Of a stretch of DNA of 64,000 nt, positions 1,289 to 64,000 are shown in pieces. Made by a program: the position numbers and the translations under genes. Each line of letters starts with the position of its first letter. Within the stretch, counting starts at the first letter, position 1. This DNA comes from Oopsacas minuta (lineage: Eukaryota > Animalia > Porifera). Below the pieces are notes generated by a model, which saw only the letters and a list, made by a program, of their open reading frames with translations, was not told the origin of the DNA and ran no database searches. The stretch spans positions 1 through 64,000 of the forward strand of contig JAKMXF010000019.1 in the NCBI GenBank assembly GCA_024704765.1. Reading direction: 5' to 3'.

Positions 1289-1692
1289 TATACAATATAC
1301 AAATGCTATAATCAATATAGAATTGCTATTATACTTCAGATATATTCTATAATTGTGCCTACAAATATTACAAATACTAATATTATATTACTCATTATAC
1401 CACAGTTCAAACCAAATAGCTTAGGGTCTGGAATTTATAGGTAACCTGTACAATACGGGTCTATACCCTTCATATCTGCCCTGCTATGATAATCTCCTTA
1501 TAACTCTACTTTCCCTTTAAAATATTTCATAAAGTATTTGGATATTTTCTAAGAATTCTGTGAATTTACAGAATTTGTATACTTTCGTCACAATAATTGT
1601 AACACAGATTGTATTTTATGGGTTTGTTATAATATGGAACTAATTAGTGAAATGTAATATATTCTTGTGAAATAATTAACTCAAAAAAATAT

Positions 1693-2820
1693 TTATACTT
1701 CCACTTCAGAACTTGAACAAGAACTATGAGATTTATCGCAGCCACATGTTACATCATTCTTTTCAACTCCCCTCCCTCTTAGTGTCCGTATGTAATGGTG
1801 TTGCTCCATATCTGTTATGATAACGTCCTGACATTCCTCCCTTTTCTCTTCTGATGCAAACTGTTTCCTTAAACGTATATCTGAGCTTTTTATGAAAAGT
1901 GTCGAACTCTGCGCTCGATCCTCTCTCTCTAGTATAGAGGATATCTTAGCAACCTTTTCTTCAGAAGGAATGTTAGTATCTTCTTCTAAAGACATGAGAA
2001 ACGCTTCATCTTCACTTTCAGTGTATTCGGGTAATACAACATCGGTTTTTTCGATTTCCCGCAGAGCCTGACTGAACCTTGAATTTGATCTGTTGCGAAT
2101 GGCGGACAGCTGGGATCTATTCTTGTCAATTTTGCGAACTAAATTCGACAAATACTGTTTTGTATTCGTAGAAATTGGTTCAGGAAGTGAAGGAGCACTT
2201 TGAGTCCTCCGAAAATTGGCTATTTTCTTTTCCATCTTTTCTTTGAACTCTTTAATATTTGTCTGTTTGAATTCAACCTCAGGTTTGTAGTCATCCTCAT
2301 CTTCCAACTGTTGAAACGCGTCCTGTCTGACAACACGGCCCTCTCTATTCACATGTGGAATGTATACATGTGTTTTCCTTGATTTATTTTTCCTTGACTC
2401 AGTCACTTCGCCCCTTGAATAATTTCTCAAAAGAGAATTGGTATTCTTCTCTTCTTCATCATAGAATTTCGTCACCTCTGTAAACGATATATTTCCATTC
2501 TTATTTAGTTCCCGAGGGGGTTTTATGGATGCGATTATAGATTTATTTCGTGTAGGATTTTCATCGTGCCAAGCATAGAAAGACGTTGCTCTAGACATCT
2601 CTACATCCGGCGGGATTTCCTCATAACCCTCGAGTTTGATTGACTCGTTAGGGACAGGAGAGGAGGATGGCAAACTCGACAGTTTCATTTTTCGTATTTT
2701 CGCTATTTTGGAAGCATGCCAGCGTAACGCTTCCTCTTTCTGTTTGTCGATAGATTTTATTTTCTTAGCAAACTTGGTGTTTATGTTGAAATGTACTTTC
2801 AATACCGAATCTTTGTACAT
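1693..2820 (-). CDS. Uncharacterised 375-aa charged/Ser-rich single-exon protein
   Basis: Long uninterrupted ORF in AT-rich DNA; K/E/S-rich, with a C-terminal Cys/Ser patch; no domain recognised. Confidence 0.65.
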   Translation of the reverse strand: MYKDSVLKVHFNINTKFAKKIKSIDKQKEEALRWHASKIAKIRKMKLSSLPSSSPVPNESIKLEGYEEIPPDVEMSRATSFYAWHDENPTRNKSIIASIKPPRELNKNGNISFTEVTKFYDEEEKNTNSLLRNYSRGEVTESRKNKSRKTHVYIPHVNREGRVVRQDAFQQLEDEDDYKPEVEFKQTNIKEFKEKMEKKIANFRRTQSAPSLPEPISTNTKQYLSNLVRKIDKNRSQLSAIRNRSNSRFSQALREIEKTDVVLPEYTESEDEAFLMSLEEDTNIPSEEKVAKISSILEREDRAQSSTLFIKSSDIRLRKQFASEEKREECQDVIITDMEQHHYIRTLRGRGVEKNDVTCGCDKSHSSCSSSEVEV

Positions 2821-3100
2821 TTCTTATTCTCGTATTCGGTCTCATTTCCCCCATTTTATTGTTCCTTATTATTATTAGTTGTCACTTACTTTCTATAGAA
2901 TGTTATTGTTTACTATTAACACTCAATTGTGTATAATAAAGAGGCGATTAGTGTAATTTGTAAATTATTCCATTTCTTTGTTATTCTATTCATTCAATGA
3001 GTCATATGACTTATTTTAAATACAAGTTTTTGATCTCTCTTCTTCCCCCGGTTGGAGAGGTAGCGGGCAGTGTTGGCAGGAATGGGAACAAAGTTATAAC

Positions 3101-3432
3101 TTAGCCATTTTCATGGAATTTGACTTGTGGCATGAACAGATGGCAATAACCATGAACTGGCATGAAATGTCCTAGAACTTTGTAAGAATATTGTGTGGCA
3201 TGAACTGGTCACATCAAATAACAACACTGCCCTTGGGTGACTAGAATATGTTAGTTTATCACCTACCCCACTCTAAATGCTGCCACTTGCCTAATCATGT
3301 GGCCAGTTCATGTCACAACAATGTTCTTGCCAAGTTCTAGCCAAATACATGTCCTATTAATGTCACAAAGCTCACAAGTTCATGGTTCTTGCAATATTCA
3401 TGCCACTAGCTAACGTACATGAAAATGGCTAA
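3101..3432. mobile_element. Foldback/MITE-like imperfect palindrome
   Basis: ttagccattttcatg (3101) pairs with catgaaaatggctaa (ends 3432); inner arms gtggcatgaactggtcacat / atgtggccagttcatgtcac also pair. Confidence 0.55.
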
Positions 3433-3740
3433 TTCTATGAATTTGTTAGTGCACGGCTACTCTAGGTCGCATCACTGTTTATCGATGCTGGTCCACCAGA
3501 AATTGGCTGATTACTTAGGGGTGTTTGTGAGGTTTTAAATCAGATTGTGGAAATAATTCAGATACTTCCTAGAAGTTGCAAACTTAGAAATTCCATTCAA
3601 ACAATCTGGATTTTGTTCCTAAAATAATTAATTATTGAAAGGAATCCTATTCAGTTACTAACACGTCCATTTGGAATGTCCGTTAGGCTGACAAATAGTA
3701 TAAATTTACATAAGGGATAATGTTTATTTCACAGAACTAA

Positions 3741-5970
3741 ATGAGCACAGACACTGGAGTTACAAAATCTAATTCTCTTCCCCCTCTCCTCTATCACTCG
3801 TCCCTTATAAAATCGGGATGGTGTTTGAAGGAGAGCGGATCGACCTTCATGGGATCCAAGAATTGGAGACGCCGTTTTTTTCGATTGACAGAGTTCCATG
3901 GTTACATTTCCTTGTCCTACTTCAAGTCGTGTAGTGACGAACTGCCAGCTGGGATAATCCCTCTGGATAGGACATACACTACTAGAATCATAGAGCTAGC
4001 TGCTAAAGGAAAGCTACACTGTTTCGCTGTAGGTCCGCTTATAGATGACGGGTCGTCTCGTACATATTATGTGTGTTGTTTGAGTGATCTGGAAAAGAAG
4101 GAATGGATGGCTGCTATTGAGGCAGCTATTGAGGGTAAGGATGAAGTTTATTGACGAACTGGTATTTGTTATAAAAATTGAAATTTGGTATGTGTGTGGA
4201 GTGTGATAAAGGGTCAAATCGATCTCTCTCAAACCCTCTGACAATAGGTGACGAATGTGTCCACCTTTCAGATATGAGGGTTTACCAGTAGGCTGATATT
4301 GTATTTGTTGTGATAAATATATTTCATAGGTGTTCCTCAGGATGCAATGAGACGTGTTAAGACCCTCAGGTCTCGGAATATGTCCCGGAGAGCAGCTAGA
4401 CCTACCCCTGGTGGAGAGGAAGATCCCCTGACTATTGTTACAGATAATGAACCTTCTGATCCTAATGGAGTGGTAAGTAGTATTACTTTAAAATACGTAC
4501 ATCAGGTGTTCGTACATTTTGACTATTGTTTCGTTGCTAGGATACAGAGGAATTCGATAGACAAATGAGTGAAATGCTTGGAGTAAAGAGTTCAGAACTG
4601 AGCCTTCCCTCTCCTACCTTGAATAAGAAGTTTTCCCTCCCCCCTCTATCTAGTCTTGATATCGATCCAATCCTCCTTGACACCCCTGATAGCAATCCTC
4701 AATCATCTACTGATGATGAGGATGATCTGGATTTTGAGACTTGTACAGGCTCTGTATATGATTGTATTAATAAGCCGTTATCAATTGGTAGGTTCTAACC
4801 AATCAATTTACAGTAAAGATAGGCTTAACTACTTTATTCATACAAATAAATGTCTTACAAACACTCAAATCTGATAGGGTGTTATATTTTGTCACCTGTC
4901 TCAGAGAGGTGTGAATATTTTCCTAAGGTATTTGGAACATTTCCTGGATTTATGAGTTACACACACATACCGACTTTCAAGTTTATAGCTCTGAAAATTT
5001 CCCAAAAATCGATATTCAATTATCGACACTTTTAACAAATAAATCTGTTTAGATCTCACATCCCTAGAGGATTACCGTAGCAGTAGATGGCGTATAGACC
5101 AGTGGTTATCAATGAAACATAAAGTAGAGTCTACAAGCTGGAAGAAAGTAGATACTAGTCATGAGATAACTCTAGCTAGAACTAAATTCAGTTCAGAATA
5201 TCCTGTCTTAATTAAGGTATTGTATGACTCCTATATTTAACCATGGATGGTGGGTTTAGTTTATTTCCTTGGATGGTGTTCTATGTCATTTTGAGACAAT
5301 CATCGCTTGGTTGGAAGAAGGGGATCTGTGTGTAAGATAAAATACACGAATTACACCATCCATGGTTAATTATATAATAAGTGGTGACCATTTTCATCGA
5401 ATCTTAAATAACAAAAATATGAATTTGATTATTCATATTTTCTAGTTAGAAGGGAAGTTAGAAGCAGATCCTCAGATAGCTCTAGAATACTTTAAAAATG
5501 CAATTAAAGTAGGAGGAAATTTTGACCATCCCTTTCGTAACGAAATTATCCTAGAATATATTCCAGAAGAACCTGAGGCTGTTGTCATACAGAACTACTA
5601 CCATGTGCCTATTCCTCATATGGATAAACGAGAACTAACAGCTCTTCGTTATTGGGTACCATCCTACATGGATACGGACAATTGCTCTGGAATGGTAGTT
5701 ACTAGAATGAATCATCCTCAGGCAGTTAAAATTAGTGACGTAGAAAAAATACTTCTGTCACCAAGTGGTTTGATCCTGAGACCACATTTTGAGCCCAGTG
5801 GTGAACTACACACTTATTGTACCGTATTTGTACAGATTAATGTCAGAGGGTCTCTCCAGAGGATGTTCAAGACAGCTTATAATTCAGGGCTTCTAAAACT
5901 TGGTTTGAGATCTGTTTTTGGACAGATTAAGCAACATGTAGAAATGTTTGTACGTGCTATGTCTTTGTAA
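3741..5970 (+). CDS. PH domain + START domain lipid-transfer protein (CERT-like architecture), about 5 exons
   Basis: N-terminal PH (KSGWCLKE..KNWRRRFFRL..EKKEWMAAIEAAI); acidic Ser/Thr-rich linker; C-terminal START-like region (SWKKVD..LEGKLEADPQ..HVPIPHMDKRELT..SGLILRP..TVFVQINVRGSL); canonical splice sites link the exons. Confidence 0.75.
5241..5365. mobile_element. piggyBac-type MITE in PH-START intron
   Basis: 12-bp TIRs ccatggatggtg / caccatccatgg flanked on both sides by TTAA (5237-5240 and 5366-5369). Confidence 0.7.
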
Positions 5971-6303
5971 ATATTTATGTTATTCGTATGTAATATGCTC
6001 TGTAGTTTGTTGTTATTATGATTTTGATTTTATTATTGTTTATTGTTGTTATTTACGAATAAATATTTATTACTTATACGGATATGCTTTAATACATATA
6101 TTACTTCTAACAAGAAGTGTTACTCTCTCAGTATTATAGGGAAATAGAAGAAGACCGGTCGTAGAATATGCCGGTTATAAGAACAATCTTAGTGTAGTAA
6201 TAAAATTGGTTCTTATTACCGGTATGTTGTCAGAATCAGGATCTATAATATGGTTCATACATCCAAATGTGTTTTCATAACCGGCATTCACTGTTACCAC
6301 ATA

Positions 6304-6524
6304 CCGTAAACTGGGGCTACTTTGGCCCACTGGGTTTGCTTTAGCCCAAATCTCAAAGCTCCAAAGAAACTAGATTGGATTCAGTATTGACTTGAAAATG
6401 ACTTGCCAAAGTTTTAACGAATTTTAGAAGTTGGAAAACAAATACACTATCTATTCGATACGTAAGAAATTTCAATATTTGGGCTAAAGCAAACCCAGTG
6501 GGCCAAAGTAGCCCCCGTTTACGG
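6304..6524. mobile_element. Tc1/mariner-type MITE with long TIRs, inserted among other MITE fragments
   Basis: About 47-bp TIRs ccgtaaactggggctactttggcccactgggtttgctttagcccaaat / atttgggctaaagcaaacccagtgggccaaagtagcccccgtttacgg with TA on both flanks; lies between ccggttataagaac...ttcttataaccgg-family hairpins (6172-6226, 6527-6587). Confidence 0.8.
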
Positions 6525-7100
6525 TACCCGTTATAAGAACATTAGTACCAGTTACTGATGATGCTCTTATAACTGGTATTCAGTGTATAATTCAGGGAAA
6601 TTGTTACAAAGGAATGTTAAGTATTCAGAGGTCTTAAACTATACGTATGTATGGCATGTCTAATTGTATTTGGAATGACATTAATCCAGGTGTTAGAATT
6701 ATAGAGGTAAACACGACAACAATCTCTATGTACTATATATCCTGTTTTGTCACTACAGGTCTACAGGACCTTTGCCCTTGCTTCCTCTATCAATCTTAGA
6801 TAAATCTGTACTTTGGATTCTCTGCCCTTGGCAAACATCCTTTTAATAATGCCAATCATAATTCACTTCCCATATCAAATGACCCTATAATTGACCTCTA
6901 TACGTAGAGGGTTATAAATACTCAGAGGAGATTATAATTTGTATTTTCATTCCTCTGTTGTCAGCATTTATTCTACAAATTTTATTTTGATTACAATAAG
7001 TGGTTTTAGTGAATAGCTAAAGAAGGGAGAATTAAGATATTTTAGGAAAGAGACAATATGAAAAGCTGATTGTAATATGATTCCTTATATGAATAATCAA

Positions 7101-16686: not shown

Positions 16687-17051
16687 AGAGTAATGGTAAC
16701 CTGATCAATTGATTACTTGTAACAATGTAATATGTACTGTGTTAATGATACAAGAACTTTACAATAATGAGATATTCATAAGAGTTGTATAAGTAATAGT
16801 ATAGTCAACTTCGTTATATCGAAGCTCAAGGGTTCGCGACTGATGAAGTATATGTAACTTTGACGGTTTGGGAACATATTTGTACAATCGTATTCACATT
16901 TGATTCAGATTCATGAGTTATACAAGGCAGGGGGGTTATATTAGAAGCATATTATCACCCATCGGACTATTCTTATATTAGATAAGATTCGCAGTCATAA
17001 CTAGATATTTCTATGTGTAAATAACCTGTTACATATCTTAGATGTTGATTA

Positions 17052-20000
17052 ATGGGTAGCCGTATTAGTCTAAACATTCAATCAGGTAGTAGTAGGTTTC
17101 GTATTCCAGATCTCCCTTCCAGCACTACAGTATTAGCTGTTAAGAAGGAAATATTCCAATACACAGGAATATTCATCAATAACCAGACGCTCAAATTCAA
17201 AGGAGTTGTATTGCAAGATAGAAATACGTTAGGGGAATGTGGAATTAAGACAGAGAATACTATTGAAGTAGAAGAGAGAGGTTCAGACTCTCAGAAGATA
17301 TTTATTGAATCTATACACGGAAATAATCTGATTACTCTAGATTACAACCCTGATGACACCATTCTGAGTATTAAAAGATATTTTCTCAGAGATTTGAGTA
17401 AGTTGAATTAGATAGTGGTGTCAACTAACATTTCATTATTTGTAATATCACAGATATTGAGATTGAACGTCAGAAGCTATTCTTCACAACAATCCTACTC
17501 CAGGACAATGAGAAACTGTCTAAGTACAAGATCCAGGAGGGTACTAAGCTGAGGTTAGAGATTACTCAACTGGATCCAAACTGTATCATGATTGAGATGC
17601 CGACAGGTCCGGTGTTAGACCTTGAATACAATGAAGACTTAACTATTGATAATCTGAAACAAACAATTTCGAGCACTGCTATGATTCATACAGACGAAAT
17701 ACGATTGTTTTTTAAAGAGGAGCAATTAGAAGCTAGGAAAAGCCTCTCGAAATATCACATCAAAGTAGGTGACACTCTTAAGCTTAAGCTACGACCTAAA
17801 GGAGAAATTATAATATATATTGACGCCCCTACAACCAAACAAACAGTTACAAATTTGACACTTGAGAATACCATCAGTGATATTAAAGTTAAGATTACTA
17901 ACGAAGCGAATATTCCTTTAGAGAAACAATCTCTCTATTTGGAAGGGGTGGTGTTGGAAAACGAGAGAACTTTACTGCATTCAGGAATAGAAGATGGATC
18001 AGTTATCAAGCTAGTACTAGAAGGACCAACTATTATGAGTATTTTTGTAAGATATAATTCAGAAAAGATCCCAATTGATGTAGACTCAAAATCTACAGTA
18101 TTGAATCTTAAAACTATTCTCGTAAGAGAGACTAAAGTGCCGGTAGAAGCTCAGAAGTTGGTGTTTGCTGGTAAATTGCTTGAAGACGATAAGGAGTTAT
18201 CTTCATACAGAATTCAGAAAGAAGTTACTGTTCATTTAATTCAGCAATTCAAGAAAGAGGAAATACAGATTGTAGTTAAAACTCATAATGATAATGATTT
18301 CCCTATTTCAGTGCTTCCTCAAACAAAGATTTATGCAATAAAAGAGACAATTGCTCACAAAGAATCCGGCGCAGCTGATCAGTACCTACTGACATTTTCA
18401 GGACGTATATTAGAAGATAATTCTAGAGTATCTAGCTATGAAATAGTGAATGAATCCTGTCTGCATATGGAACTTAAGCGAGAGGATAATGACCCACAAC
18501 CCCCAGTCCGTATGCGTTCCAGAGATGTTACGGTGAGTGAGTGTACGTGTGTTGTAATCTATTGAATAGATTTAATAATATAAACATTTATACGTGTATC
18601 TAGGGTGACCCATTCAGAAATCCAACATCCTCTATTCAAGATTTACCTCAACCAATCCTAAACCAACAACATGACGATCTCCCAGCCTTATTTGAACCGC
18701 CACGCCATTATCAGAACTTTGATTCTCCGCAAGTTTCATATGCTCGTGAAAACATTGGCCCTCGTTACTCTAATGAGAGAATTCCACTCCCACAGTCCAA
18801 CAAATATTTAGCAACTGAAATGCCTGACCTGCCTCCTCCAAACTACCGTTCTTTTAGTCCTAGTGGGTCCACCTCGGGCTCCTCAGCTATCCCAGAGAGA
18901 TTACCATATAATCCATTCCCTTACAGGTCCAATATACAACCAATGATGGGAAGTGGATATGGCCGACAAAATGTAACCGTGGGTGAGTATCCCTCACGCC
19001 AATATGTCTTGCGTAACCCTAGTGGCTACATTCTTCCTGATCAGGTGGATCTTAATAATTTTCCTTTACCACCACCCTTTCGTCCTGATCATGTTCTCAT
19101 GCAAGAAAGCTATAAGATTGAGAACACTAGAGATCCTTTACCTGAGCACAAGATCTCCATTAGAGTATCATTTCTGTGTAGCGAGGCAGTTAACATTGAG
19201 ATTAAAGATAACGCTACAATACTTGAAGTTAAGAGAGCTATAAAAATTGAGAAAGGGTTTATTGAAGAACATCAAAAGATCTATTTTAATGATTCAATTT
19301 GTGGAGATACACAGATATTGACAGATCTAGAAATTGTGGATAACAGTGGAATACAAGTTGATATACTATACAGCTGGAATGTGTGTTTCTTACATCACCA
19401 AATGATCATCAAATGTTATGCCAGTTCTAATATCGCTGATATTAAGAATTCTATTTTTGAAAAAGAGAAAATACCAGTGGAGAATCAACGGTTATTCTTG
19501 GAGGATAGAGAGCTATCTAACGAGCAATCTCTCAGTCACTATCAACCAGGACAAAATTTAAAATTTACCCTAGAAATAACTAAAAATATTTTGATTCTGT
19601 TCTCGTCTGGAAAGACTTTCATACTCCATAGCTGTCACGTTAAGATATCAGGGAAATTTATCAAGGAGCAGATCTACCAAAACTTCAAGATACCTGTAGA
19701 AAACCAAACACTGACTTATCTTGGTAAAGAAATAAAAGATGACCTAACTCTTGAGGATATTAAATATAGAGAAGAAAATAAAATAATTATTAACATTGAT
19801 TTCCATAATTCTAGATGGATAACTGTTTTGTTAAAGTTATCGAATGGGGATCAACAGCTCATAAAGATTCGTAGTCTGGATACAGTAGGGAAGCTTAAAA
19901 GTCTTGTGAATACTAATAGCTCTCTCCTAGTTGATGATCATGACTTTACTTATAATCATTGCAATCTATCCGATGAGAATATCATTGATTTCTACCAAAT

Positions 20001-21138
20001 TCGTAACTATGAAGAAATATCAATGTTTTCTAGTGAATTTAAAGTTGTTAATATGACACTGTTGAGTGGATGTGTTGAGCCTTTCTGTCTTAAACACTTT
20101 CAAAACCTCGAAAATATCAAAAGACGAATGCAGAATCAGTTCAGACTACCTCCAAATTACAATAAATTGTTTTTTGGGAAGATCAGGAATGTAGCTAATA
20201 TTAACCCACAGCATATCTCAAATGGTGAAAGCGTGTTCATAGGTCCTAACAATTCAATCTTAGTCTCTATTCTCTCTTCAAACAGTAGAATAATAGAAAT
20301 TCTGATAATTAAAGAAGAGCGAGTTTTCTCATTAAAACAGAAAATTGAAATGAAGGAGCATATTCCTATTCATGTTCAGCAATTGAGTTTTGAAGGAATT
20401 TCTATGGACAATGATACTTGTATTGGTAACTTCAATATTTCACCTAACAGCACTATCTTCCTTAACATATCAGAAGAGCCTATTAGCATTTACCTAAGAG
20501 ATGATGCTAATAATACTATACATTTCCCTCAGATAGATAGATACTTGTCTGTACGATTCTTAATGAAAAATCTAATTCAAATGGGCTACACTATTCGAAA
20601 AGATGATTTATTCGTGTTTGAAGGAACTGTTTTACATTCCAATGCTCCACTATGTTACTATGGTATACAGAATGGATGTAATTTGAGGTTTATCAGTAAA
20701 ACAGCGTCTAACTGTTTGTCTTCATCTCATCGAGGTTGTACGAGTGATAACAGAATTCCTTTTCAAGCTCCTAACCAGTTCAGTACTCCTATACAACACC
20801 AAGATGAGAGTGTACCCAGCATTGCTTGTACTTCCTGCATGCAGATCCAGTGTATTTGTGTAGTCCGTCTTCATTCACACACCGAGTCAAATATCGGGAT
20901 CAGGCCCCGACGGGATTTTACTCCATATTTTAATCGCCCTAAATCCGGTCCAATACACCCAGACATACAACAACCACATCATAATCATGCTAAAATATCT
21001 GAACCATATCCGTCGACCAACTTGCCCCAATCTCCACCATTCTATAACACTCCCACTAATCAGGATAGAAGTCATCGAGCTGAATATCAACCTCCATCTA
21101 ATCAGCACCATGGAAACTATCATACTAATTATGACTGA
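17052..21138 (+). CDS. Poly-ubiquitin-like protein A (about 1,319 aa, about 13 divergent UBL domains)
   Basis: Exons 17052-17397, 17454-18532, 18604-21138 join in frame (3,960 nt). Repeated UBL motifs such as IPLEKQSLYLEGVVLENERTL and VPVEAQKLVFAGKLLEDDKELSSY; Pro-rich linker between UBL6 and UBL7. Confidence 0.85.
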
Positions 21139-21313
21139 TTTCAAATGGCTGAAAGGTTGTTCTACCGAATTACTGATTATCTTTTTGATTCAGGTATTTT
21201 TATATTTTATACTATACTGCTGTGTGTTTTATTATATCAATTGCGTATTTTGAGAGTTCTCTACTTATCATATTCGATCCTTCCACCTCTTTTACTTAGA
21301 ATTTATAGTCTAA

Positions 21314-24019
21314 ATGCAGATCAAGATCCTGACTGACCGCAATGAGATAATAATAGAAGTAACCTTTACTGACAGAATTGATGCAGTTAAGGAGAAAATC
21401 GCTGAGAAGCTAGGATGCGAAATTCACAGACAGCGTCTATCATTTCAAGGAGTTATCTTAGAAGATCACAAGCAGATATCACAATACCCTATTTCACAAG
21501 AATCCAGTCTAAACCTTGAAATACGAATGAGACTGTATGTAAAGATGGCTAGCATGACGCTAGATTTGGATTGCTATCCTTCCTGGAGCATCAGTGAAGT
21601 GAAGCATGAGATTGGCCAGAAGGTACAGGTACCAGCCAACAATCAGATGTTATCATACAAAGACGAAGAGCTTAAGAATAATAAAACTGTTAGAGATTAT
21701 GATTTCAGAGATCAAACTTGTATTGCTATGTCTGGAGTTATTATGGTCACTGTTAATTTCCCTTCTGGTAAGTGTATGCGATATCCTTTCGACCAACAAG
21801 CCACTGTATTTGCCATAAAACAAGAAGTTTGGGAGAACGAGCGCATTCCTACTGATCGGCAAACTCTCAACTATAAAGGAAGAGAGCTGAGAGGTGATCA
21901 GACATTCTCTTCTATCCGCTACAGAGATGGAGACAATATTTATCTAGCTATTCAACATTCACCTGCAGACATAATACAAGTATTTGTTAAGACACCTATC
22001 GGCCAGAAGCGCTTTATCAGTATAAGCAAATATGAAGCTGTTGGAAGGATTGAGGATAAAGTTGGGTTTCAGCTAGAAGATCTATTTTCACATATCTGCT
22101 ATTACAAAGGTAAAGTGTTAGATGACGTTAATGTAGTAGAGGTCTATAATATACAACAATTGGCTGAGTTAGAGCTGAGGTCTTGTGAAGACAGAATTCC
22201 TGTGTTTGTTATCTTAGCTAGTGGAACTGTTTCTTCTTTCTACGTAAAACCGAGTGAACTTGTATCTGACGTGACTGCACGAATTAGATCGAAGCTGCAT
22301 GTTCCTAATGAACACAGGAAACTCTATCATAATCACAGGCTGTTACCGAACGATCAAATAATAAGAAATTGTGACATGATTCCAGGGGATAATCTCTTAT
22401 TCGGTACTGATGACTCGTTTAGCATAACTGTGTATCCATCAGGGATACCAGTTGATATTCTAGTACGAAATACTGACAGGATTAAGGATTTGAAGTATCA
22501 AGTCGAACGGAGGGAGAAAATTCCTTTTCATTTGCAAGAGTTTACATTTCAAGGTTCCATTCTAGATAACGAACAGCTTGTGTCTAGCACTCAGTTGAGA
22601 TGTGGAACAATGATTATACTCACTATTATCTCAAATCCTAGCAACATGATCGATGTAAAGTTATTTGATCTCTCGAAAAATAAAATGAACATTGCAGGTA
22701 ATTCCGAGTTTTCAACAGTAGGAAATTTACAAAATAGGATAGCATTTAGTGAGCAAGATGTCTCCTTCGTATTTAAAGACATCGTCATGAAGCAATCCAA
22801 GCTATTAAGCAACTACGGGATAAGGCATGAATCGGAGATCTTGGTAGTTAGTGCTAATTATAATATATTAGCTGTTCCGCCTTCTAATACCAATAGATCC
22901 CATTATACTGGAACAACTCCTGCTGAAAATGTTAACTATGACAGTAGAAACCAATTTCCTGTGTTTAATGCTAATTATCAGGATGGCGCTTCTTCACACC
23001 TGAACTACCCTTATCAACAACATCAACAGCCTGATCAACCACCATATCAATCACAACAGCAACAAACACATATTCATCAACAACAACCACAATATCATCA
23101 ACAACCTCGACAACATACGAATTTTTCTCCTCAACACTCAAATATCCATCAACAACATACAAATTTTCCTCCTCAACAACCACAATATCATCAACAACCT
23201 CGACAACATACGAATTTTCCTCCTCAACAAACAAATATCCATCAACAACAAACAAACTTTCCTCCTCAACAAACAAATATTCATCAACAACATACGAATT
23301 TTCCTCCTCAACAAACAAATATCCATCAACAACAAACAAACTTTCCTCCTCAACAAACAAATATCCATCAACAACAAACAAACTTTCCTCCTCAACAAAC
23401 ACAATTTCCTCAACAACAACCACAAAATCAAAACACTTATCCTCAACAACAATCCCAGCATGACACACCTTCTGAACTAGTCCTCTTATCCTCTTTACCA
23501 ATACCACATACTGAAAATTTTGAACAGTCGCACGATCGATTAGACTTCCTGACCAAATCAACTATCGCATCTAAAGAAATCTGCATGCATTTATCGCATC
23601 ATGTAACTGGTACTTTTCAGGTTCAGTGTACTACTCATGAATCAATAGCTACTCTCAAAGAACGTATATTCCACCACACACGCATTCCATCTAGCAAGAT
23701 CCATCTCCTGCATGATGACCAACTCCTTTCTAATGATAAAAGGACCCTAGAGGAGTATAAAATAATGTATGACAGAGTAATTAAGCTGAATGATCTACTT
23801 CGAATTTCTGTGACTTATGAGTCAAATGATATCATAAGATGGGTGAATGGGATTGATTTTGTTAGCACTTTAGGTGCAGATATCGCCGAGGAGTTGAAAA
23901 TGGATAAAGATAACCTCATTCTTACATATAAAGATGCGATATTGGATTTTGATAAGAGACTCAATCAATATCAAATTGACTTTGATTCTAAAATTATTGC
24001 GGAAAAAATACGTAAGTAA
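21314..24019 (+). CDS. Poly-ubiquitin-like protein B (901 aa, about 9 UBL domains, Q/P/N-rich repeat insert)
   Basis: Single long ORF; UBL motifs (HRQRLSFQGVILED, IPTDRQTLNYKGREL, IPSSKIHLLHDDQLL). A possible extra 3' exon to 24137 is described in findings. Confidence 0.88.
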   Translation: MQIKILTDRNEIIIEVTFTDRIDAVKEKIAEKLGCEIHRQRLSFQGVILEDHKQISQYPISQESSLNLEIRMRLYVKMASMTLDLDCYPSWSISEVKHEIGQKVQVPANNQMLSYKDEELKNNKTVRDYDFRDQTCIAMSGVIMVTVNFPSGKCMRYPFDQQATVFAIKQEVWENERIPTDRQTLNYKGRELRGDQTFSSIRYRDGDNIYLAIQHSPADIIQVFVKTPIGQKRFISISKYEAVGRIEDKVGFQLEDLFSHICYYKGKVLDDVNVVEVYNIQQLAELELRSCEDRIPVFVILASGTVSSFYVKPSELVSDVTARIRSKLHVPNEHRKLYHNHRLLPNDQIIRNCDMIPGDNLLFGTDDSFSITVYPSGIPVDILVRNTDRIKDLKYQVERREKIPFHLQEFTFQGSILDNEQLVSSTQLRCGTMIILTIISNPSNMIDVKLFDLSKNKMNIAGNSEFSTVGNLQNRIAFSEQDVSFVFKDIVMKQSKLLSNYGIRHESEILVVSANYNILAVPPSNTNRSHYTGTTPAENVNYDSRNQFPVFNANYQDGASSHLNYPYQQHQQPDQPPYQSQQQQTHIHQQQPQYHQQPRQHTNFSPQHSNIHQQHTNFPPQQPQYHQQPRQHTNFPPQQTNIHQQQTNFPPQQTNIHQQHTNFPPQQTNIHQQQTNFPPQQTNIHQQQTNFPPQQTQFPQQQPQNQNTYPQQQSQHDTPSELVLLSSLPIPHTENFEQSHDRLDFLTKSTIASKEICMHLSHHVTGTFQVQCTTHESIATLKERIFHHTRIPSSKIHLLHDDQLLSNDKRTLEEYKIMYDRVIKLNDLLRISVTYESNDIIRWVNGIDFVSTLGADIAEELKMDKDNLILTYKDAILDFDKRLNQYQIDFDSKIIAEKIRK
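23040..23460 (+). repeat. Coding tandem repeat, mainly 42-bp unit encoding TNFPPQQTNIHQQ(Q/H)
   Basis: Repeat visible in both the DNA and the 901-aa translation. Confidence 0.9.
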
Positions 24020-57794: not shown

Positions 57795-59344
57795 CACTGA
57801 ATTCTAACTATAAGCTCTTTAGCGTAAAATTGCTATTTTGTATAGAAAACCATTTGTAATTATGGAATGTAATAGGCTGGTTATAAACACCTCAAGGTTT
57901 AGAGAGAAAGGCATAGCACAATCTTTCTCATAATTGAGCGGGAAAGTGTCGCGAGGCCGGTATCTATCCATTAGGAAATATAATTAGATCTAGCATATTC
58001 GTGTTGAGTTCACAGCGGGACAATTACTCACAAACTTCCAGAAGAAGCATGACTATATGGGAAATGTTAGGCTTTTGTTCTCTTAAATAAATGAGGGAAA
58101 CAATTGTATAATTAGCATAGGAATGAAGGGAAACAGTTACAATATCTGAGATTCAATAGTCTAGTGCTTTATAAGGCTGTAAGAAGAAGCATACAATAAC
58201 AACATATAACGAGCTAGACTAGATATACCACAAGGAAACATGGCGACAATGAGAGTGTCTTTTGTTTATAAACCATGGATATCACAAGTTATTGAGATGT
58301 TGAATTTGAGGCTTTATGAGTAAATAAGATCCTCAACGAAGCTTAGAGGTTTTTATGCGGAGAATAAAATGAAAATTTGTAGTAGCGTAGTTGCATACAT
58401 GCAAAACTCTAGAGATCAGTAATTCACAACGCATAGGGAGTTATGCATTAAGTTATAATTCAACAAATAGCTTATACAAAGCTCAGCTAATACTGTAGTA
58501 CAGTTTTTGTGTATTAGCTTTTCTATCTTCTAGGAAAGGTCATTTTCGGAATAATGAAAAGTCACCTTTCCAAATGAGGGTATGGTGTTTTTGTATTGCA
58601 AAAAAACTGTACTATACTAGAGCTTAGCTAAGCTATAAGGAATCTCATAATTCAAAGCTCAAGGGGCAACGTAAGAAATGTATGTTTTGACTTTGAGTCA
58701 AGAAATTTGACTATAAGTACATGTACGTACTATTGGAGGGGGTTTTGGTATAAAGTGAGACCTGAGCCTGCGTTGTGCAATCTTTTACCTTATATGATAT
58801 CATTAGCTGAAGTCTCCTCCGGAGGACACGAATATACGCTGGAACAACATCCAAGGCAAATTCACACAAGAACTAAAATAGTGTGTTAAGACAAGTGACT
58901 GATATACGTTGGAAGTAGCTAACCATCAATTACTGCAAATATTGTGTCTCAATAACATTGGATTTTATTTATTCAAATGAGATTCCTTTCGTTTCGATTT
59001 GAACAAAGAAAACATGAATAATTGCTTACAATACTAATTCTACTGATAATGTATTTATGTCTACAAGTTATTATCTCATAATTACGATAAATAAACAAAT
59101 CATTAGCAGTTTAAATAAACAAATATATTTCTATATTTATGATTAATACAATCAATAAACACAGCAGAATCTGTTTAATGACAGATTAGACATTTCCCTG
59201 AGAGTTTAATTATTTTGTTATATTATTAATAATACAAATAACAGCTAAGTAATATTTACAGAATTCTTATAATCATAGCAATGCTATGAATGAGCAAATA
59301 AGTATACAAACACTAAATATCTTTTCAAGTTATATACTATACTT

Positions 59345-62300
59345 TTACAACTGTCCACCCCTCTCGATCTCATCCTTGTACGTCTGAACGAATGACACCA
59401 CAGCTTTGTTGGGCCTGAGGTCCTTCTCATCTAGCTCCTTATAGGAGTATGGGTCATAATTCTTACCGGTCCTCAGGTGCTCTAGAATGGCCTCCTTCTC
59501 GTATGTCTCCCCATCTGGGGTAATTACTGGGTCAACGAATAGATCAAGGGTCAAGGGACACACTAGGTGCTTAGGGTAATTAACTTGTACCTCTTGGTCA
59601 CTCCCTAGTAAGTCAATACGTACATCTCTCTTGGTCCTAACACGTGCATTAATATCTGCATGGTCAAATGCCTTTTGAAGGTACATGTCTCTATGACACC
59701 TCAGCTCTGTAGCTTTCACACTATCTAGCGGATCATCAGGCTCCGCATCTATCAGTAATCCGTACACGTGGTTGAAGATATCTCCTATCCTGACACCTGG
59801 TGCATAGAACCTATCAAGAATAGTATGACATATTCTACCAGCACTGTTTATATTACAGTGATATATAGGAGTAATGAATCTTATGTTTGGAGGCTTGGAT
59901 GGGTAATCATCTTTGAATTCTACAAACAGCTCAAAGGTTGCTTCCTTATAAGGAGTGCCATCCGGACCGGACATGATGATCCTCCAGAAGTCTACGCTCT
60001 CCTCACAGGGGAACACTTCAAATGCTGGATGTGGATGAAGATTGATAGTAGGAGAGCTCTTGGAGAATTCTTTTCGTAAAATCTGTGTTTATATTGCAAG
60101 CTAGGTGTTTATTGATGAGTGCACGTGCTAAACATTTCTGAGCTGTTTGTACGGGTAAGTTTAATTTATCAGGGAGTATGTGATCCAATTGGGTATCAAT
60201 AGGTTCTGCTGCCTGAGCTTCAAGGTTGATATCCTCTCCTGTCACATAAGCAGGTATACAATTAAGACGACTGTTCATTGATAGCATAGGTTCTTCTTCA
60301 AATATGTTAAGGAGTTCTTTCGTGTCTGTTGGTTTGAAGGAGTATCCTCCTGTAGCTTTCGCTATAGCATGGGTATCTACTACTTCTTCACATAGAAGGA
60401 CACAGTCCATCGTCACTTGGCTATCAATTAGCAGCTGAGCAGCCTCATCAGCTGTTACAGTGGAGTTGTTATCATAACCATCTGTTAGACACAAGATCCT
60501 CTTTGAAACGTCATGTAACTCAGGGTGTCGTGACACGAATTTATTCATTCTTTGTACTGCGAAACGTATCGCGTTATAGACAGATGTACTGTTACCAGGC
60601 GGGAATGAAGTGAATTCGCTGTTGAAGGCTCTAAAATTTTCTGATATGGGATATTGTAGTTTAGAATCTGTAGCGAATAAAGTTAATCCAATCACGTGTT
60701 TCAGATCGTAAGCAGTAGTCCTATTGCAAAATGCTTCAAAAGCCTCCACAACAGAATGGAACTTAGCTTTCCCGTCGAGATAAGGGAAGGTCATTGAACC
60801 GCTGACATCTAGCACCACCATAATGATCTCCACGGGATCTCGGGTGATACCCTCCATCCCATGACTCATAACATTTGTCAAGGTTTTCAACTTCCTGAAA
60901 CAGACTGGAGGATTTTCTTTGATCTGTCTATCCATGTCATCAGCGTCGAATAAGATAGATACCCCTGTTGTCACCTGGAAGTATACATGTGGTTTGTTTG
61001 GGTCTTTAGATGTGTCGATGTAAACACCGATATGACCATCATCTGTTGTTATCATTGTTGATTTCCTGCATTGTGGCGCCTTCACATTTAGGGGTGCTTG
61101 TACACATAATACGGAGTACTTGTCGGTTTTCCTTTCAAGGTTTTTCCATTCTCCGGTGAGGTCTATCCCACAGGTAGGAGCAGCTGTACATCTCCAGACA
61201 ACAGCCTCGTCAGTAATAAATGATTTTACCATACGTTTATAGTTGTAGAGATATTGTATCATTGTTAGCTCTGTTGATTCATTAAGTATAGATTTCTCTA
61301 CGTAATGATCCATCCCGTTATTATCACGGACCTTTACTGGATCTGTCATACGCTGATGGGTCTCTGAGCAGGTTAGAGGGTATTTGTCGTACTTTTCTGT
61401 GTTCTGGTGGCCTGGTTTCGCGTGGTCTATGAAGTATACCCAAAAATAGTTTGAATATTCCGTTACCTGACTCGTTTCTATGGTTACCGTTCCAGGCATA
61501 TGCAATTTAGGGGTTTTAGGTTTGATAACTTTGAAAATTTGTACTAAACATTCCTGTATAGCAACACGATGAGGAAGAGATAGGGCCTCCCTCGTGAAGA
61601 GGAGATGGAGGGAATGAATCAATGGGGGACACCCTGTGATACCCCTGAGGTGTCCTAAGGTGTTAAAAGGTATACCATTCCTGACCTGTTCTTGTTCCAC
61701 CATCCAATCAGATAGCGCGTAAAGACAACTGAAGAAGAAAGAGGCCCCGTATGAACTCTGTTCCTTGTACCATGTTGGTTTGCATTCAGAAATATTAAAA
61801 TTCTTATCTTTTCCCAAACTCCAAAAGTGTTTATTTGGTCTTATCTCTAGCGCCACTTGGTTACCAATATTTAAGTCACTCAGAACCACATCATTAGAAG
61901 AATACACTAGCGTATCGTCTCGATACAATTGTATCAAATGTCCCGGTATGCCAGTCATGTCCTGTATCCGTTTAATCAGCTGATAATACGTTGCTATGCT
62001 ACAGTCCGTTTGTATACCTCTTGGTTCTAATCCACATTCCTTATTCCTAATTAGAATAGTATCATTCCCTCTACACAATGTATCTGCCTGTGTGTACCTT
62101 GCTATCTTATCACTATAGCATATTAACCTAGGGATAGCATAGACCATTGGAATGTCTGGGTATTCCTCCAAGCACCAATCAGATAGCTTGCTGATATAAG
62201 ATATAGGCCTTGTTGCTAATGGATACCCCTCACATGTGTATAGTTCTACGGTCAAATCGTCCCCTAACTCATTATGCTCCTGCATGCAGATACGGTTAAC

Positions 62301-62985
62301 TAGATCACAGTACAGAGTTTGGTTCGTGTTAAGAGGGCCTATAGTTCTCTTATCCGGGGTCTGGGTGGTTAGCAGCATATACTGGATGTCTAATTTCTCC
62401 CTACGAGTTTGCATTCTGTAAGCTTTATCGTTCATTTCACTCAGATCAGGCTCGATCTGGCTTAGACTTGGCGCGAAATTATTTACCTAAAATGGGTTAA
62501 TTCATAACGTCATAGGAACAGATTCTAGTATTTTCCTGCAGCATTGTATACCGTGCAAGTTGCCTTGTTGTATACAATAAAATTACATCACGTATGGAGG
62601 ACTTAATAGATTGAATCTTGTCATTTGAGATCCGCTATCAACAGACTATGATTTCCCCTGACTGTTCAGATGTTAACTATCTATTTCAAATATGGATTTG
62701 AGACCGCCACTACGTATGCGTATAATTTGCAAATATGTTCTTAATAAATATGATACTTAGTTACGCACTCACCTTTCCTCCAAACATTTCAGTGAGCTTT
62801 CTAAGGAATCTCTTCGCCTCCAGCTTTGTCATACAGATATCCTCTGTTAACATATTTAAGTCAAAGTCCACCAGATCGTCCATATTCCTAGTACCGACGA
62901 GTTTAAATGTATCCTCGTATTTTTCTAGCCCCTGAGCCTCAAGGAATTCCTTTAGGCCAACACCTCCTTTAGTATTAGTTGCCAT
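59345..62985 (-). CDS. SAM - UBL-like - vWA - UBC(E2) - U-box fusion protein, with a 1-nt frameshift at the start of the E2 domain
   Basis: Exon 1 62985-62773 (SAM: FLEAQGLEKYEDTF..LEAKRFLRKL), in-frame exon 2 starting VNNFAPS; vWA MIDAS LDVSGSM..T..LTDG; E2 RILQEL/HPAFEVFP..GPDGTPY..YPSKPP..YHCNINSAGRIC; U-box VCPLTLDLFVDPV..GETYEK. Confidence 0.85.
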
Positions 62986-63162
62986 AGAATTGATAGAATA
63001 ATTACAAATCGATGTAAATCACATTTAAATAGGATGGCCTAATACCTGGAACTTGATATGACGCTATATTTAGTGTATATGTCCTGTGGGAATACTCACA
63101 TTACTCATCTCATATCTTTCTGAATAGTTAATACATTGAAATTAAATGTTATTCCTGCATTC

Positions 63163-64000
63163 ATGGATAAAATCGATTTATTTTTGGAGAAGGTACGTCT
63201 CACTGAGTATAGAGAGAGGTTTATACCTCAGGTCAGTGATGTGTTTGAGTTTAGAAAGTATTTAAAGGATCCAGAGTCTCTGAGACAGCTCGTAGGGCTG
63301 TCTAAGCTTGAGGTTAAGAGGTTTGTGAGACTATGTGAACCAACTCTTCAGGTTAGTGACATACAATAAGCTATCTTAACACATGTATGAACCATCTGGT
63401 ATTTGTGTCTACTGCATATGACGAATAGTAGTTTGTTAGAATGTTAACAAATTCATTCAATTAATATTAGTACTGTTGTTTGTAGGAAATGAATGTACAA
63501 ACTATTTCAACTGATCCTCCTCCCCCTATCACACCTGATACTCATGTTACTACAAACACCTCAGAGGTGTTATATCTAAACATTAAACTCTTGGATCTAG
63601 AAGGTGTCATCCTTGATAAGAGGTTCCCTATACAGGTTAACAAATCAATTCTCTATTATCAGCTGGTTGATAGTATTCATAAGGTGTTAAAGAATGAAAC
63701 TAATAAAATTAGCTTTAGAAGTATTGAAATATATTCTAAGACAGGTTACCCTCTTGCTAACAGTCCAATGGTGTTTGTGAGACCAATTTCTGAGTGGTTC
63801 CTGCAACAAAATGAATTATTGTATGTTTACCAAAAGGTGTTAAGTCATAAATATGAGTTTGTGAGTGATGTAGATGCTAAGGGGACTGTAGTGACCATCC
63901 AGCTAAGAAATAGTACTTCTAAATTCTCATTCAAATTCTATCAGGAATTCGTATTTGTTTGTGATTTGAAGACAGCTCTGTCGCTTGAATTACACATTCC
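63163..64000 (+). CDS. Paralog of the SAM...vWA-E2-U-box gene, 5' part only
   Basis: SAM exon 63163-63350 (FLEKVRLTEYRERF..LEVKRFVRLC), phase-0 intron, open exon from 63486 to the window end. YYQLV..IEIYSKTGYPLANSPMVFVRPISEWFL..LHIP aligns with YCDLV..VELYTCEGYPLATRPISYISKLSDWCL..TGIP. Confidence 0.8.

What the first reader, a model, noticed from the sequence alone, without database searches (positions are those of the whole stretch)
59345..62985. Self-contained E2-E3 enzyme: SAM, UBL-like, vWA, UBC and U-box in one gene
Seen: SAM exon; two beta-grasp-like segments (..ELYTCEGYPL..; ..TGIPGHLIQLY..LSDLNI); an internal degenerate U-box-like stretch (LTCSETHQRMTDPVKV); vWA with complete MIDAS; E2 with catalytic Cys (HCNINSAGRIC); C-terminal U-box. 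Known: E2 and U-box E3 are normally separate proteins, SAM domains polymerise and vWA domains bind ligands through MIDAS. Inference: a sensor-ligase that oligomerises, captures a target by vWA and ubiquitylates it needing only E1; it could also be the partner of the poly-UBL proteins.
Basis: partly seen in the sequence, partly recalled or inferred. Interest (0 to 1): 0.7.

Follow-up and report, generated by a model that had tools for sequence, protein, structure and literature searches.

The report
Single-chain E2 plus U-box ligase gene
A glass-sponge gene encodes, in one protein chain, a ubiquitin-conjugating enzyme joined to its own U-box ligase domain, a metal-dependent binding domain and two ubiquitin-like domains; it belongs to a widespread but unstudied eukaryotic family, and the public annotation splits it in two because of a one-base assembly error.

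Summary
On the minus strand of this Oopsacas minuta window lies one gene. Exon 1 (62985-62773) encodes a SAM domain, a GT..AG intron spans 62772-62487, and exon 2 runs from 62486 to 59345.

Exon 2 encodes two ubiquitin-like domains, a roughly 310-aa domain of unknown function ("MID") with a U-box-shaped insert, a vWA domain with a complete MIDAS, a UBC E2 with its catalytic Cys (codon 59830-59828) and a C-terminal U-box.

It is one extra T. Contigs from four public runs of one sample all lack it, and every homologue reads straight through ("YYQSHPHPAFEVFPC"). I therefore read it as an assembly error. It makes the public annotation split the gene into an 893-aa and a 209-aa protein.

The architecture is not a sponge invention. 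MID-vWA-E2(-U-box) proteins occur in other sponges, a choanoflagellate, lamprey, teleosts, a fungus, an alveolate and a giant-virus contig. All share an invariant H-C-N...G-R-I-C-H active-site signature and a near-invariant MIDAS. Some fish copies are auto-named after mimivirus R795 ("bifunctional E2/E3 enzyme"). I found no paper on the family.

Function as a self-contained ligase is inferred, not shown. This scan noted the same family before on other DNA of this genome (s1-293471, s1-284886).

The parts
62773..62985 (-). Exon 1: start codon at 62985-62983 and a SAM domain (71 aa)
   Evidence: Pfam SAM_1 6.2e-5 and SAM_2 1.7e-4. It ends in phase 0 before the donor AAG|GTGAGT.
62487..62772 (-). 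Intron, 286 nt, GT..AG
   Evidence: Sequence. One contig of run X2 joins 62486 to 62774, with one differing letter at 62773 (tables 5 and 5c). X2 depth is about 260-300 over the intron and 1000-7000 over the exons (table 2).
59345..62486 (-). Exon 2, including the stop TAA at 59347-59345. It is continuous once the extra base at 60038/60039 is discounted.
   Evidence: Homologues align in one frame to 60054 and in the next from 60037. The reads lack one base.
62124..62393 (-). UBL1, a beta-grasp domain (exon-2 aa 32-121). It is the most conserved domain among the glass-sponge copies (mean pairwise identity 0.68).
   Evidence: AF2 model; di-ubiquitin Foldseek match; conservation.
61818..62069 (-). 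UBL2, a ubiquitin fold (exon-2 aa 140-223). It has no C-terminal Gly-Gly and is the most variable domain (0.36).
   Evidence: Z 10.8, rmsd 2.4; profile match to ubiquitin; variability.
60882..61817 (-). MID, a conserved domain with no Pfam family: a helical part, a U-box-shaped insert and a small beta-barrel (exon-2 aa 224-535)
   Evidence: AF2 pLDDT 86. There is no PDB sequence match. It is found in 132 representative clusters, nearly always with vWA+E2.
61212..61379 (-). Internal U-box/RING-shaped insert within MID (exon-2 aa 370-425)
   Evidence: Z 5-6.1, rmsd about 2.5 to solved U-boxes and RINGs. The family U-box HMM hits this insert in distant homologues. Sequence similarity within this protein is not significant.
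60297..60842 (-). vWA domain with a complete MIDAS (D560 at 60809-60807, S562, S564, T634, D669)
   Evidence: Pfam VWA_2 6.6e-10 and VWA 1.2e-8. The MIDAS is 96-100% conserved.
60038..60039 (-). One surplus T (tcT Tcat) that shifts the frame and creates a false stop at 60020-60018. I read it as an assembly indel.
   Evidence: One letter is left out at 60038 or 60039 at full depth in the contigs of all four runs (table 4). Homologues read YYQSHPHPAFEVFPC.
59603..60077 (-). UBC/E2 domain. Helix 1 (TKRILQEL) lies upstream of the indel. H-C-N is at 59860-59852 and the catalytic Cys codon at 59830-59828.
   Evidence: UQ_con 3.4e-31; Ubc13 E 1.2e-24 with GRIC aligned; invariant H60, N62, G67, C70 and H71.
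59363..59575 (-). C-terminal U-box
   Evidence: Pfam U-box 1.4e-14; LubX U-box 1 at 2.6e-15, PUB and CHIP at 1e-8 to 1e-7.
63136..64000 (+). Start of the divergent head-to-head paralogue (SAM-like exon and UBL1). It runs off the window.
   Evidence: tblastn of family members; family HMM hit; full gene seen in L003.

Best explanation
This is one intact, expressed gene of Oopsacas minuta. It encodes a protein of about 1117 aa with the order SAM - UBL - UBL - MID (with a U-box-shaped insert) - vWA (MIDAS) - UBC E2 - U-box.

It belongs to an ancient eukaryotic family whose core is vWA + a special E2 (signature Y-H-C-N-I-N-x3-G-R/K-I/V-C-H) + U-box.

The most likely mechanism is as follows. E1 charges the E2 cysteine. 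The chain's own U-box then activates discharge of the E2~ubiquitin. It could do so in cis, through the 20-25-residue linker, or in trans on the E2 of a neighbouring chain in a SAM- or U-box-mediated oligomer. Ubiquitin goes onto proteins held by the metal-dependent vWA site and/or the variable UBL2/MID surface.

The tandem UBLs cannot be conjugated and form a rigid unit with MID, so they are probably a scaffold or an intramolecular regulatory or binding module.

Shown here: the gene structure, the domain identities, conservation of the catalytic and binding residues, and the phyletic spread. Inferred: catalytic activity, cis or trans use of the U-box, the role of the vWA, and the biological process. 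An immune or conflict role is suggested only by lineage-specific expansion and clustering.
For: Gene structure:
- The splice joint and the missing base are both seen in read contigs.
- Homologues are continuous ORFs across the junction.
- Vazella transcripts are full length.

Domains: Pfam; AF2 models with pLDDT 86-87.5; ubiquitin fold.

Catalytic competence:
- The Cys aligns with the Ubc13 and UbcH5 catalytic Cys.
- H, N and C are invariant, and the Phe matching UbcH5 F62 is mostly kept.
- The PDDPLDS loop is kept.
- The U-box is close to the E2-binding U-boxes of LubX, PUB and CHIP.
- The MIDAS is 96-100% conserved in more than 100 members.

Family:
- 46 close and about 60 wider homologues carry vWA+UQ_con+U-box.
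- 132 clusters carry MID, nearly always with vWA+E2.
- Taxa run from a choanoflagellate, a fungus and an alveolate to lamprey and teleosts.
- A giant-virus contig encodes U-box-vWA-E2 with the same signature.

Expansion: at least five copies lie on one 443-kb contig, and the head-to-head pair is conserved in a second assembly.
Against: - There is no biochemical evidence for any member, and I found no paper on the family.
- The HPN motif reads H-C-N and the residue after the catalytic Cys is His, so the chemistry may differ from standard lysine ubiquitylation.
Cis activation is only a steric estimate.
- The four runs come from one sample and are kept as contigs. They show the base is absent there but cannot exclude a rare frameshifted allele. 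Only X1, X3 and X4 contigs bridge the site with more than 31 letters on both sides.
- The SAM hit is barely above threshold.
Confidence: 0.6

Rival explanations
1. The gene is a frameshifted pseudogene. Alternatively, two separate genes are really present: a SAM-UBL-vWA protein and a small E2-U-box protein, as in the public annotation.
For: The window sequence has a TGA at 60020-60018 and a frame change. NCBI annotates an 893-aa and a 209-aa protein. An earlier scan note describes 'apparently frameshifted' copies elsewhere in this genome.
Against: All four runs' contigs lack one base exactly at 60038/60039 at full depth. Removing it restores YYQSHPHPAFEVFPC, identical to the homologues. The 209-aa model would lack E2 helix 1. 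There is no decay elsewhere in 3.1 kb of ORF.
Confidence: 0.05
2. The E2 domain does not carry ubiquitin to lysines in the usual way. It might handle another ubiquitin-like protein, or transfer to non-lysine acceptors. Alternatively it is regulated through the extra Cys/His beside the active site, with the U-box and vWA serving that reaction.
For: The family-invariant H-C-N and C-H replace H-P-N and C-L. Ubiquitin-like genes and domains are abundant in the locus.
Against: The closest solved relatives are ordinary ubiquitin E2s (Ubc13, UBE2D, RAD6, UBE2E) at E 1e-24 to 1e-20. The acidic loop used for lysine activation is kept. No UBL in the window ends in a free Gly-Gly that I tested.
Confidence: 0.15
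3. The protein is mainly a ubiquitin-binding or scaffolding adaptor. MID would be a dead papain/USP-like fold that holds ubiquitin or the UBLs. The E2-U-box pair would be auto-inhibited or serve only for self-modification and turnover.
For: Papain-like deubiquitinases and peptidases recur at the top of three structure searches. They include ZUFSP Mug105 (Z 5.7), TssM (Z 5.5), UfSP, OTU and PLpro. USP14/15/18 rank first in Foldseek at E 0.2, and a Peptidase_C39 cluster is the best Atlas row. The UBLs and MID form one rigid body (pTM 0.88). The position where a papain Cys would sit is S/A/R.
Against: All these matches lie in the range the tool calls common for unrelated folds (Z below 8, E above 0.1). 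Strong conservation of the E2 catalytic residues and the MIDAS argues for a working enzyme.
Confidence: 0.15

Closest known systems
Mimivirus R795, 'Probable bifunctional E2/E3 enzyme' (Swiss-Prot name, recalled from my own knowledge; two source names seen here copy it)
   Same: A UBC E2 and a U-box lie in one polypeptide. A Labeo rohita family member carries this name, and so does an eel transcript listed in a published table. A giant-virus metagenome contig encodes U-box-vWA-E2 with the same NINxxG[RK][IV]CH signature.
   Different: R795 itself was not on hand, so homology to it is untested. The viral ORF found here lacks SAM, the UBLs and MID and has its U-box at the N-terminus. As far as I could find, R795 is annotated by similarity, not by experiment.
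E2/E3 hybrid enzymes UBE2O and BIRC6 (own knowledge)
   Same: A large multidomain protein contains a UBC domain and ubiquitylates substrates without a separate E3.
   Different: They have no RING or U-box and recognise substrate through other regions. They have no vWA, SAM or UBLs and a canonical HPN. There is no evidence of common descent beyond the UBC fold.
Separate U-box E3 + E2 pairs: CHIP-UbcH5/Ubc13, LubX, plant PUBs
   Same: The C-terminal U-box is closest to LubX U-box 1, PUB and CHIP. The E2 is closest to Ubc13, UBE2D, RAD6 and UBE2E. The E3-binding Phe and the U-box hydrophobic contact positions are kept.
   Different: Here both partners are fused with a 20-25-residue linker, and the E2 carries H-C-N...C-H.
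vWA-containing RING/U-box ligases: plant RGLG and WAV3 (own knowledge) and Monosiga Mb_UBOXa (PMC3087547)
   Same: A cytoplasmic vWA domain is combined with a RING-type or U-box ligase domain. Marin 2010 notes a Monosiga U-box protein with a vWA domain, and the choanoflagellate S. infusionum has a vWA-E2-U-box member.
   Different: RGLG and WAV3 have no E2 domain. Whether Mb_UBOXa belongs to this family was not tested.
WDSUB1 and SAM-U-box proteins (PMC3087547)
   Same: SAM and U-box occur in one protein, including in sponges.
   Different: WDSUB1 has WD40 repeats and no E2, vWA or UBL. The relationship between the U-boxes was not tested.

Membership tests
UBC / E2 ubiquitin-conjugating enzymes (PF00179) | Sequence match to the UBC core over its full length | tested here: met
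   UQ_con E 3.4e-31, profile positions 4-136 of 140. Ubc13 E 1.2e-24. Helix 1 lies upstream of the indel.
UBC / E2 ubiquitin-conjugating enzymes (PF00179) | Catalytic Cys at the conserved position | tested here: met
   GRIC aligns with GRIC of Ubc13 and GSIC of UBE2D3. The Cys is invariant in 14 diverse and 45 close members.
UBC / E2 ubiquitin-conjugating enzymes (PF00179) | HPN motif upstream of the Cys | tested here: inconclusive
   His and Asn are invariant, but Pro is replaced by Cys (H-C-N) in at least 90% of the family. The partner gene B keeps HPN.
UBC / E2 ubiquitin-conjugating enzymes (PF00179) | E1-dependent thioester with ubiquitin | not testable with these tools
   Needs biochemistry.
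U-box E3 ligases (PF04564) | U-box sequence and fold without zinc ligands, with E2-contacting hydrophobic residues | tested here: met
   Pfam 1.4e-14; LubX 2.6e-15 and CHIP about 6e-8. The C-P-L...D-P-V...G-x-T-Y-E core is conserved. Fold of the C-terminal U-box was not modelled here.
vWA domains with MIDAS | DxSxS...T...D metal-ion-dependent adhesion site | tested here: met
   D560, S562, S564, T634 and D669 are present. Each is 96-100% conserved in 105-126 members.
SAM domain | Match to the SAM profile above the curated cut-off | tested here: met
   SAM_1 23.7 bits against 23, and SAM_2 22.1 against 20.5, both marginal. Paralogue P0066 matches clearly. Ability to polymerise was not tested.
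Ubiquitin-like modifiers | Beta-grasp fold | tested here: met
Ubiquitin-like modifiers | Free or processable C-terminal Gly-Gly for conjugation | tested here: not met
   UBL2 ends ...VALEIRPNKHFW and runs straight into MID. These are built-in UBL domains, not modifiers.
Papain-like / USP-like deubiquitinases (considered for MID) | Fold match well above background | tested here: inconclusive
   Best Z is 5.5-5.7 over about 155 residues, Foldseek E is 0.2 or worse, and Atlas TM is 0.29/0.48.
Papain-like / USP-like deubiquitinases (considered for MID) | Conserved catalytic Cys and His | tested here: not met
   The position six residues after the invariant Gln is S/A/R. The only His near the expected strand is not conserved.
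R795-type bifunctional E2/E3 proteins | E2 and U-box in one chain, homologous to mimivirus R795 | not tested
   One-chain E2+U-box is met. The link rests on source names of a fish protein and an eel transcript and on a giant-virus contig.

The most novel reading that the evidence does not exclude
The family is a self-sufficient, ligand-gated ubiquitylation machine. Binding of a target or danger signal to the invariant MIDAS site, or to the variable UBL2/MID surface, together with SAM-driven assembly, would switch on an E2 with unusual chemistry. That chemistry would depend on the invariant Cys and His flanking the active site. In this reading the glass-sponge A/B gene pairs form hetero-oligomers: A with an intact MIDAS and H-C-N, B with a degenerate MIDAS and HPN. 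The whole would be an ancient immune sensor-effector, also borrowed by giant viruses.
Probability: 0.15. Interest if true: 0.8.

Novelty: new variant of a known kind. Interest (0 to 1): 0.55.

Why it matters
E2 and RING/U-box E3 are almost always separate proteins. A naturally fused, widely conserved E2-U-box with its own binding domains would be a minimal system. It could be used to study how an E3 activates an E2~ubiquitin, and how substrate capture is coupled to transfer.

The invariant H-C-N...C-H signature marks an E2 subfamily that no paper I could find has examined. Its spread is patchy but deep: protists, a fungus, sponges, lamprey, teleosts and giant viruses. It is also expanded in glass sponges. 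Together these make it a candidate conflict or immunity module.

There is a practical point too. The public Oopsacas annotation splits this gene because of a one-base assembly indel. Other 'frameshifted' copies in this genome should be rechecked against reads before being called pseudogenes.

Tried and rejected
- A 70-nt GT..AG intron (60152-60083) would also fix the frame, and Pfam extended the UQ_con match into that frame. I rejected it because all homologues align in the first frame down to 60054 and the reads show a 1-nt difference instead.
- Sequence homology of the internal U-box-like stretch to the C-terminal U-box: hhalign probability 6% over 22 columns, so not supported by sequence.
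- The MID profile against PDB sequences gave nothing. The vWA against PDB by phmmer gave nothing at E <= 0.01.
- MID as an active cysteine peptidase: rejected, because no Cys/His is conserved.
- The language-model atlas search of MID returned only unnamed clusters with low recognition.
- A link to the poly-UBL genes in the window: only generic ubiquitin-like similarity.
- Named mimivirus relatives: a search with the giant-virus ORF returned only unnamed metagenome proteins.
- Literature: eight searches found no description of the family. Burroughs et al. 2008 on the E2 fold could not be opened.
Full report
WHAT IS THERE

The window is eukaryotic. The 822-aa product of the long minus-strand ORF is 100% identical to Oopsacas minuta LOD99_10138, a glass-sponge protein.

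The minus strand carries a start codon at 62985 and a 71-codon SAM exon that ends before a consensus donor (AAG|GTGAGT). A 286-nt GT..AG intron follows (62772-62487). After it comes a long open frame from 62486.

Pfam finds the following:
- SAM_1 on exon 1 (6.2e-5, just above the cut-off).
- VWA_2/VWA on exon-2 residues 555-730 (6.6e-10 and 1.2e-8).
- UQ_con (3.4e-31) and U-box (1.4e-14) on the last 230 residues.

THE FRAME CHANGE

In the window the vWA part ends at a TGA (60020-60018), and the E2-U-box part lies in the next frame.

I first considered a 70-nt intron (60152-60083). Close homologues ruled it out. They align in the first frame down to 60054 and in the second frame from 60037, leaving 16 nt for 5 residues. 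All of them read ...TKRILQELSYYQSHPHPAFEVFPC.... The window reads caa tct T cat, which is one surplus T at 60038/60039.

I laid the contigs of four public runs (one sample, one study) on 59200-63100. In all four, one letter is left out at exactly 60038 or 60039, at the full depth of the covering contig. One of these is a 2932-nt contig that spans 59705-62637 with that single gap (tables 4 and 8). I therefore read the frameshift as an indel error of the deposited assembly, not a feature of the gene.

The public annotation follows the error. It has an 893-aa 'VWFA domain-containing protein' and, 44 bp downstream, a separate 209-aa UQ_con+U-box gene.

Run X2 behaves like cDNA. Its depth is 1000-7000 over both exons and about 260-350 over the intron and flanks. 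One of its contigs joins 62486 to 62774, which is the predicted splice, with one differing letter at the last exon base (tables 2, 5 and 5c). Depth does not drop at the vWA/E2 junction.

The glass sponge Vazella pourtalesii has Trinity transcripts with complete ORFs of 1112-1154 aa and the same architecture.

The evidence available does not support that. The runs are contigs from one sample, so it remains formally open.

DOMAINS UPSTREAM OF THE vWA

An AlphaFold2 model of exon-2 residues 1-548, built with 44 homologues, is confident and compact (pLDDT 87.5, pTM 0.88).

Residues 32-121 and 140-223 are two beta-grasp domains.
- Foldseek matches both together to linear di-ubiquitin and ISG15 (E 4e-6 to 1e-4, about 190 columns).
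- UBL2 alone superposes on ubiquitin-like structures at Z 10.8-9 and rmsd 1.8-2.5.
- The family profile finds ubiquitin among PDB sequences.
- Pfam 'ubiquitin' hits 12 of 45 members.
- UBL2 runs into the next domain without a Gly-Gly. These are built-in UBL domains, not modifiers.

Residues 224-535 ('MID') have no Pfam family and no sequence match in the PDB. A separate model is confident (pLDDT 86). It has three parts:
- A helical part.
- An insert (residues 370-425) that superposes on U-box and RING domains: Ufd2, E4B, CHIP, LubX U-box 2 and TRAF6, at Z 5-6.1, rmsd about 2.5, about 52 of 56 residues.
- A small Tudor/SH3-like barrel.

Its sequence similarity to the C-terminal U-box is not significant here. 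In Amphimedon and several other distant members, however, a family U-box HMM does hit the same insert. In an O. minuta paralogue, zf-Nse gives a weak hit there.

As a whole, MID draws weak matches to papain-like deubiquitinases and peptidases in three different searches. These include ZUFSP, UfSP, OTU, PLpro, TssM, USP14/15/18 and Peptidase_C39. All lie in the range the tools describe as common for unrelated folds. The position where a papain Cys would sit is S/A/R across the family. I leave MID as a conserved domain of unknown function, possibly a dead papain-like fold.

THE CATALYTIC END

The E2 is closest to Ubc13, UBE2D3, RAD6 and UBE2E (E 1e-24 to 1e-20). Its GRIC aligns on the catalytic Cys.

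Across sponges, a choanoflagellate, lamprey, fishes and unnamed metagenome members, H60, N62, G67, C70 and H71 are invariant and C61 is at least 90% conserved. This gives the signature Y-H-C-N-I-N-x3-G-R/K-I/V-C-H in place of HPN...C-L.

The Phe matching UbcH5 F62 and the PDDPLDS loop are kept.

The U-box is closest to Legionella LubX U-box 1 (2.6e-15), plant PUBs and CHIP.

About 20-25 residues separate the last E2 helix from the U-box. They are partly conserved (KTKxDVRIxILG).

Whether the U-box acts on its own E2 or on a neighbour's therefore remains inference.

The MIDAS residues (D560, S562, S564, T634, D669) are all present. Each is 96-100% conserved in more than 100 members. That argues for a conserved metal-dependent ligand.

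THE FAMILY

A word-based search with exon 2 found 46 proteins. Nearly all are 950-1150 aa with vWA+UQ_con+U-box. They include O. minuta paralogues and five copies on one 443-kb contig.

A search restricted to the E2-U-box region of a full-length homologue added further taxa:
- Amphimedon queenslandica
- Oscarella pearsei
- Salpingoeca infusionum
- Lampetra planeri
- Menidia menidia

A profile of MID against 1.84 billion representatives found 132 clusters. My own HMMs for the five modules show that MID almost always travels with vWA and E2, and usually with a U-box. The U-box is either C-terminal or sits between MID and vWA.

Named members include two more teleosts, Coilia grayii and Labeo rohita. 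The Labeo protein is named 'putative bifunctional E2/E3 enzyme R795'. Others are a basidiomycete (Tephrocybe rancida) and the alveolate Vitrella brassicaformis.

A giant-virus metagenome contig encodes a 661-aa U-box-vWA-E2 protein with the same active-site signature.

The N-terminal SAM recurs in Amphimedon and Menidia.

The architecture is therefore old and widespread, with patchy retention and a glass-sponge expansion. Among 38 glass-sponge-type copies, mean pairwise identity differs by domain:
- UBL1: 0.68
- E2: 0.62
- UBL2: 0.36
- U-box-like insert: 0.38

LITERATURE

Eight full-text searches found no paper describing the family.
- Marin 2010 (PMC3087547) mentions a Monosiga U-box protein with a vWA domain, and SAM-U-box proteins in sponges.
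- An eel transcriptome paper (PMC5560681) lists an 'R795' look-alike in its immune-defence table of genes changed by nematode infection. This is a hint only.
- The mimivirus R795 name is a similarity-based annotation as far as I know, and I could not test R795 itself.

NEIGHBOURHOOD

About 150 bp upstream, on the plus strand, a divergent paralogue starts and runs off the window. In the public record it is a 1013-aa UQ_con+U-box gene.
- Its vWA no longer matches the family HMM.
- In the orthologous partner of the second assembly the MIDAS positions read D-I-S-C-D and T-N-G.
- In both partners the E2 has a canonical HPN.

The same head-to-head A/B pair, with 55-60% identity between the B genes, occurs next to the closest homologue in a second assembly. 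A conserved, divergently transcribed pair suggests co-regulation and perhaps joint action. I did not test this.

STEPS NOT TAKEN

All searches and folds used the pieces by reference or used full-length natural homologues.

VERDICT

The gene is a glass-sponge member of a broad, unstudied family of fused E2-U-box ligases. Two earlier follow-ups of this scan, on other DNA of the same genome, reached the same family-level conclusion. One of them called its copies frameshifted. The result here suggests checking those against reads.

Noticed in passing
L003 6001-9641 (window 59345-62985): The public annotation (GCA_024704765.1, contig JAKMXF010000019.1) splits this gene into LOD99_10138 (893 aa, VWA) and a separate 209-aa UQ_con+U-box gene. 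The cause is the one-base indel at window 60038/60039.
   Followed up: yes
window 63136-64000 (+); L003 2487-5823; L001 4166-7219: The head-to-head partner gene B is a divergent paralogue. It gives no family vWA HMM hit, its E2 keeps a canonical HPN, and in the L001 orthologue the MIDAS positions read D-I-S-C-D and T-N-G. The A/B pair is conserved in a second assembly (ERZ25072730). In O. minuta, B also changes frame near L003 3080-3107, while its L001 orthologue is one ORF. This may be another assembly indel.
   Followed up: partly
window 59759 to 62512: Contigs of runs X1, X2 and X4 join 59759 to 62512, skipping 2752 nt with unknown letters between, at roughly half the depth of the full-length contig in X1. 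This could be a deletion or replacement allele, a paralogue with similar flanks, or a contig-graph artefact at a short repeat (TCATAACGTCAT).
   Followed up: no
window 62851-62969 (exon 1) and 62706-62766 (intron): A dense run of single-letter differences between the window and the contigs of most of the four runs. It suggests a divergent haplotype or individual at the 5' end of the gene, while exon 2 is nearly identical.
   Followed up: no
protein P0131 (2109 aa, ENA contig of 21 kb): It holds at least 13 tandem copies of a roughly 90-aa unit that matches MID profile positions 129-217, the U-box-shaped insert. It has no vWA or E2.
   Followed up: no
L002 55-2040 (IMG/VR GVMAG-M-3300014493-9): A giant-virus metagenome contig encodes a 661-aa U-box-vWA-E2 protein with the family's NINxxG[RK][IV]CH signature. 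Its relatives are all unnamed metagenome proteins.
   Followed up: partly
PMC5560681, immune-defence table: A European eel transcript named after mimivirus R795 ('probable bifunctional E2/E3 enzyme') is listed, with a ratio of 0.18, among the immune-defence genes changed by Anguillicola infection.
   Followed up: no
window 17049-24016 (+): The poly-UBL genes give only weak, generic matches to the UBL2 part of the family HMM (E 3e-7 to 2e-3). This is no sign of a specific relationship to this gene.
   Followed up: partly
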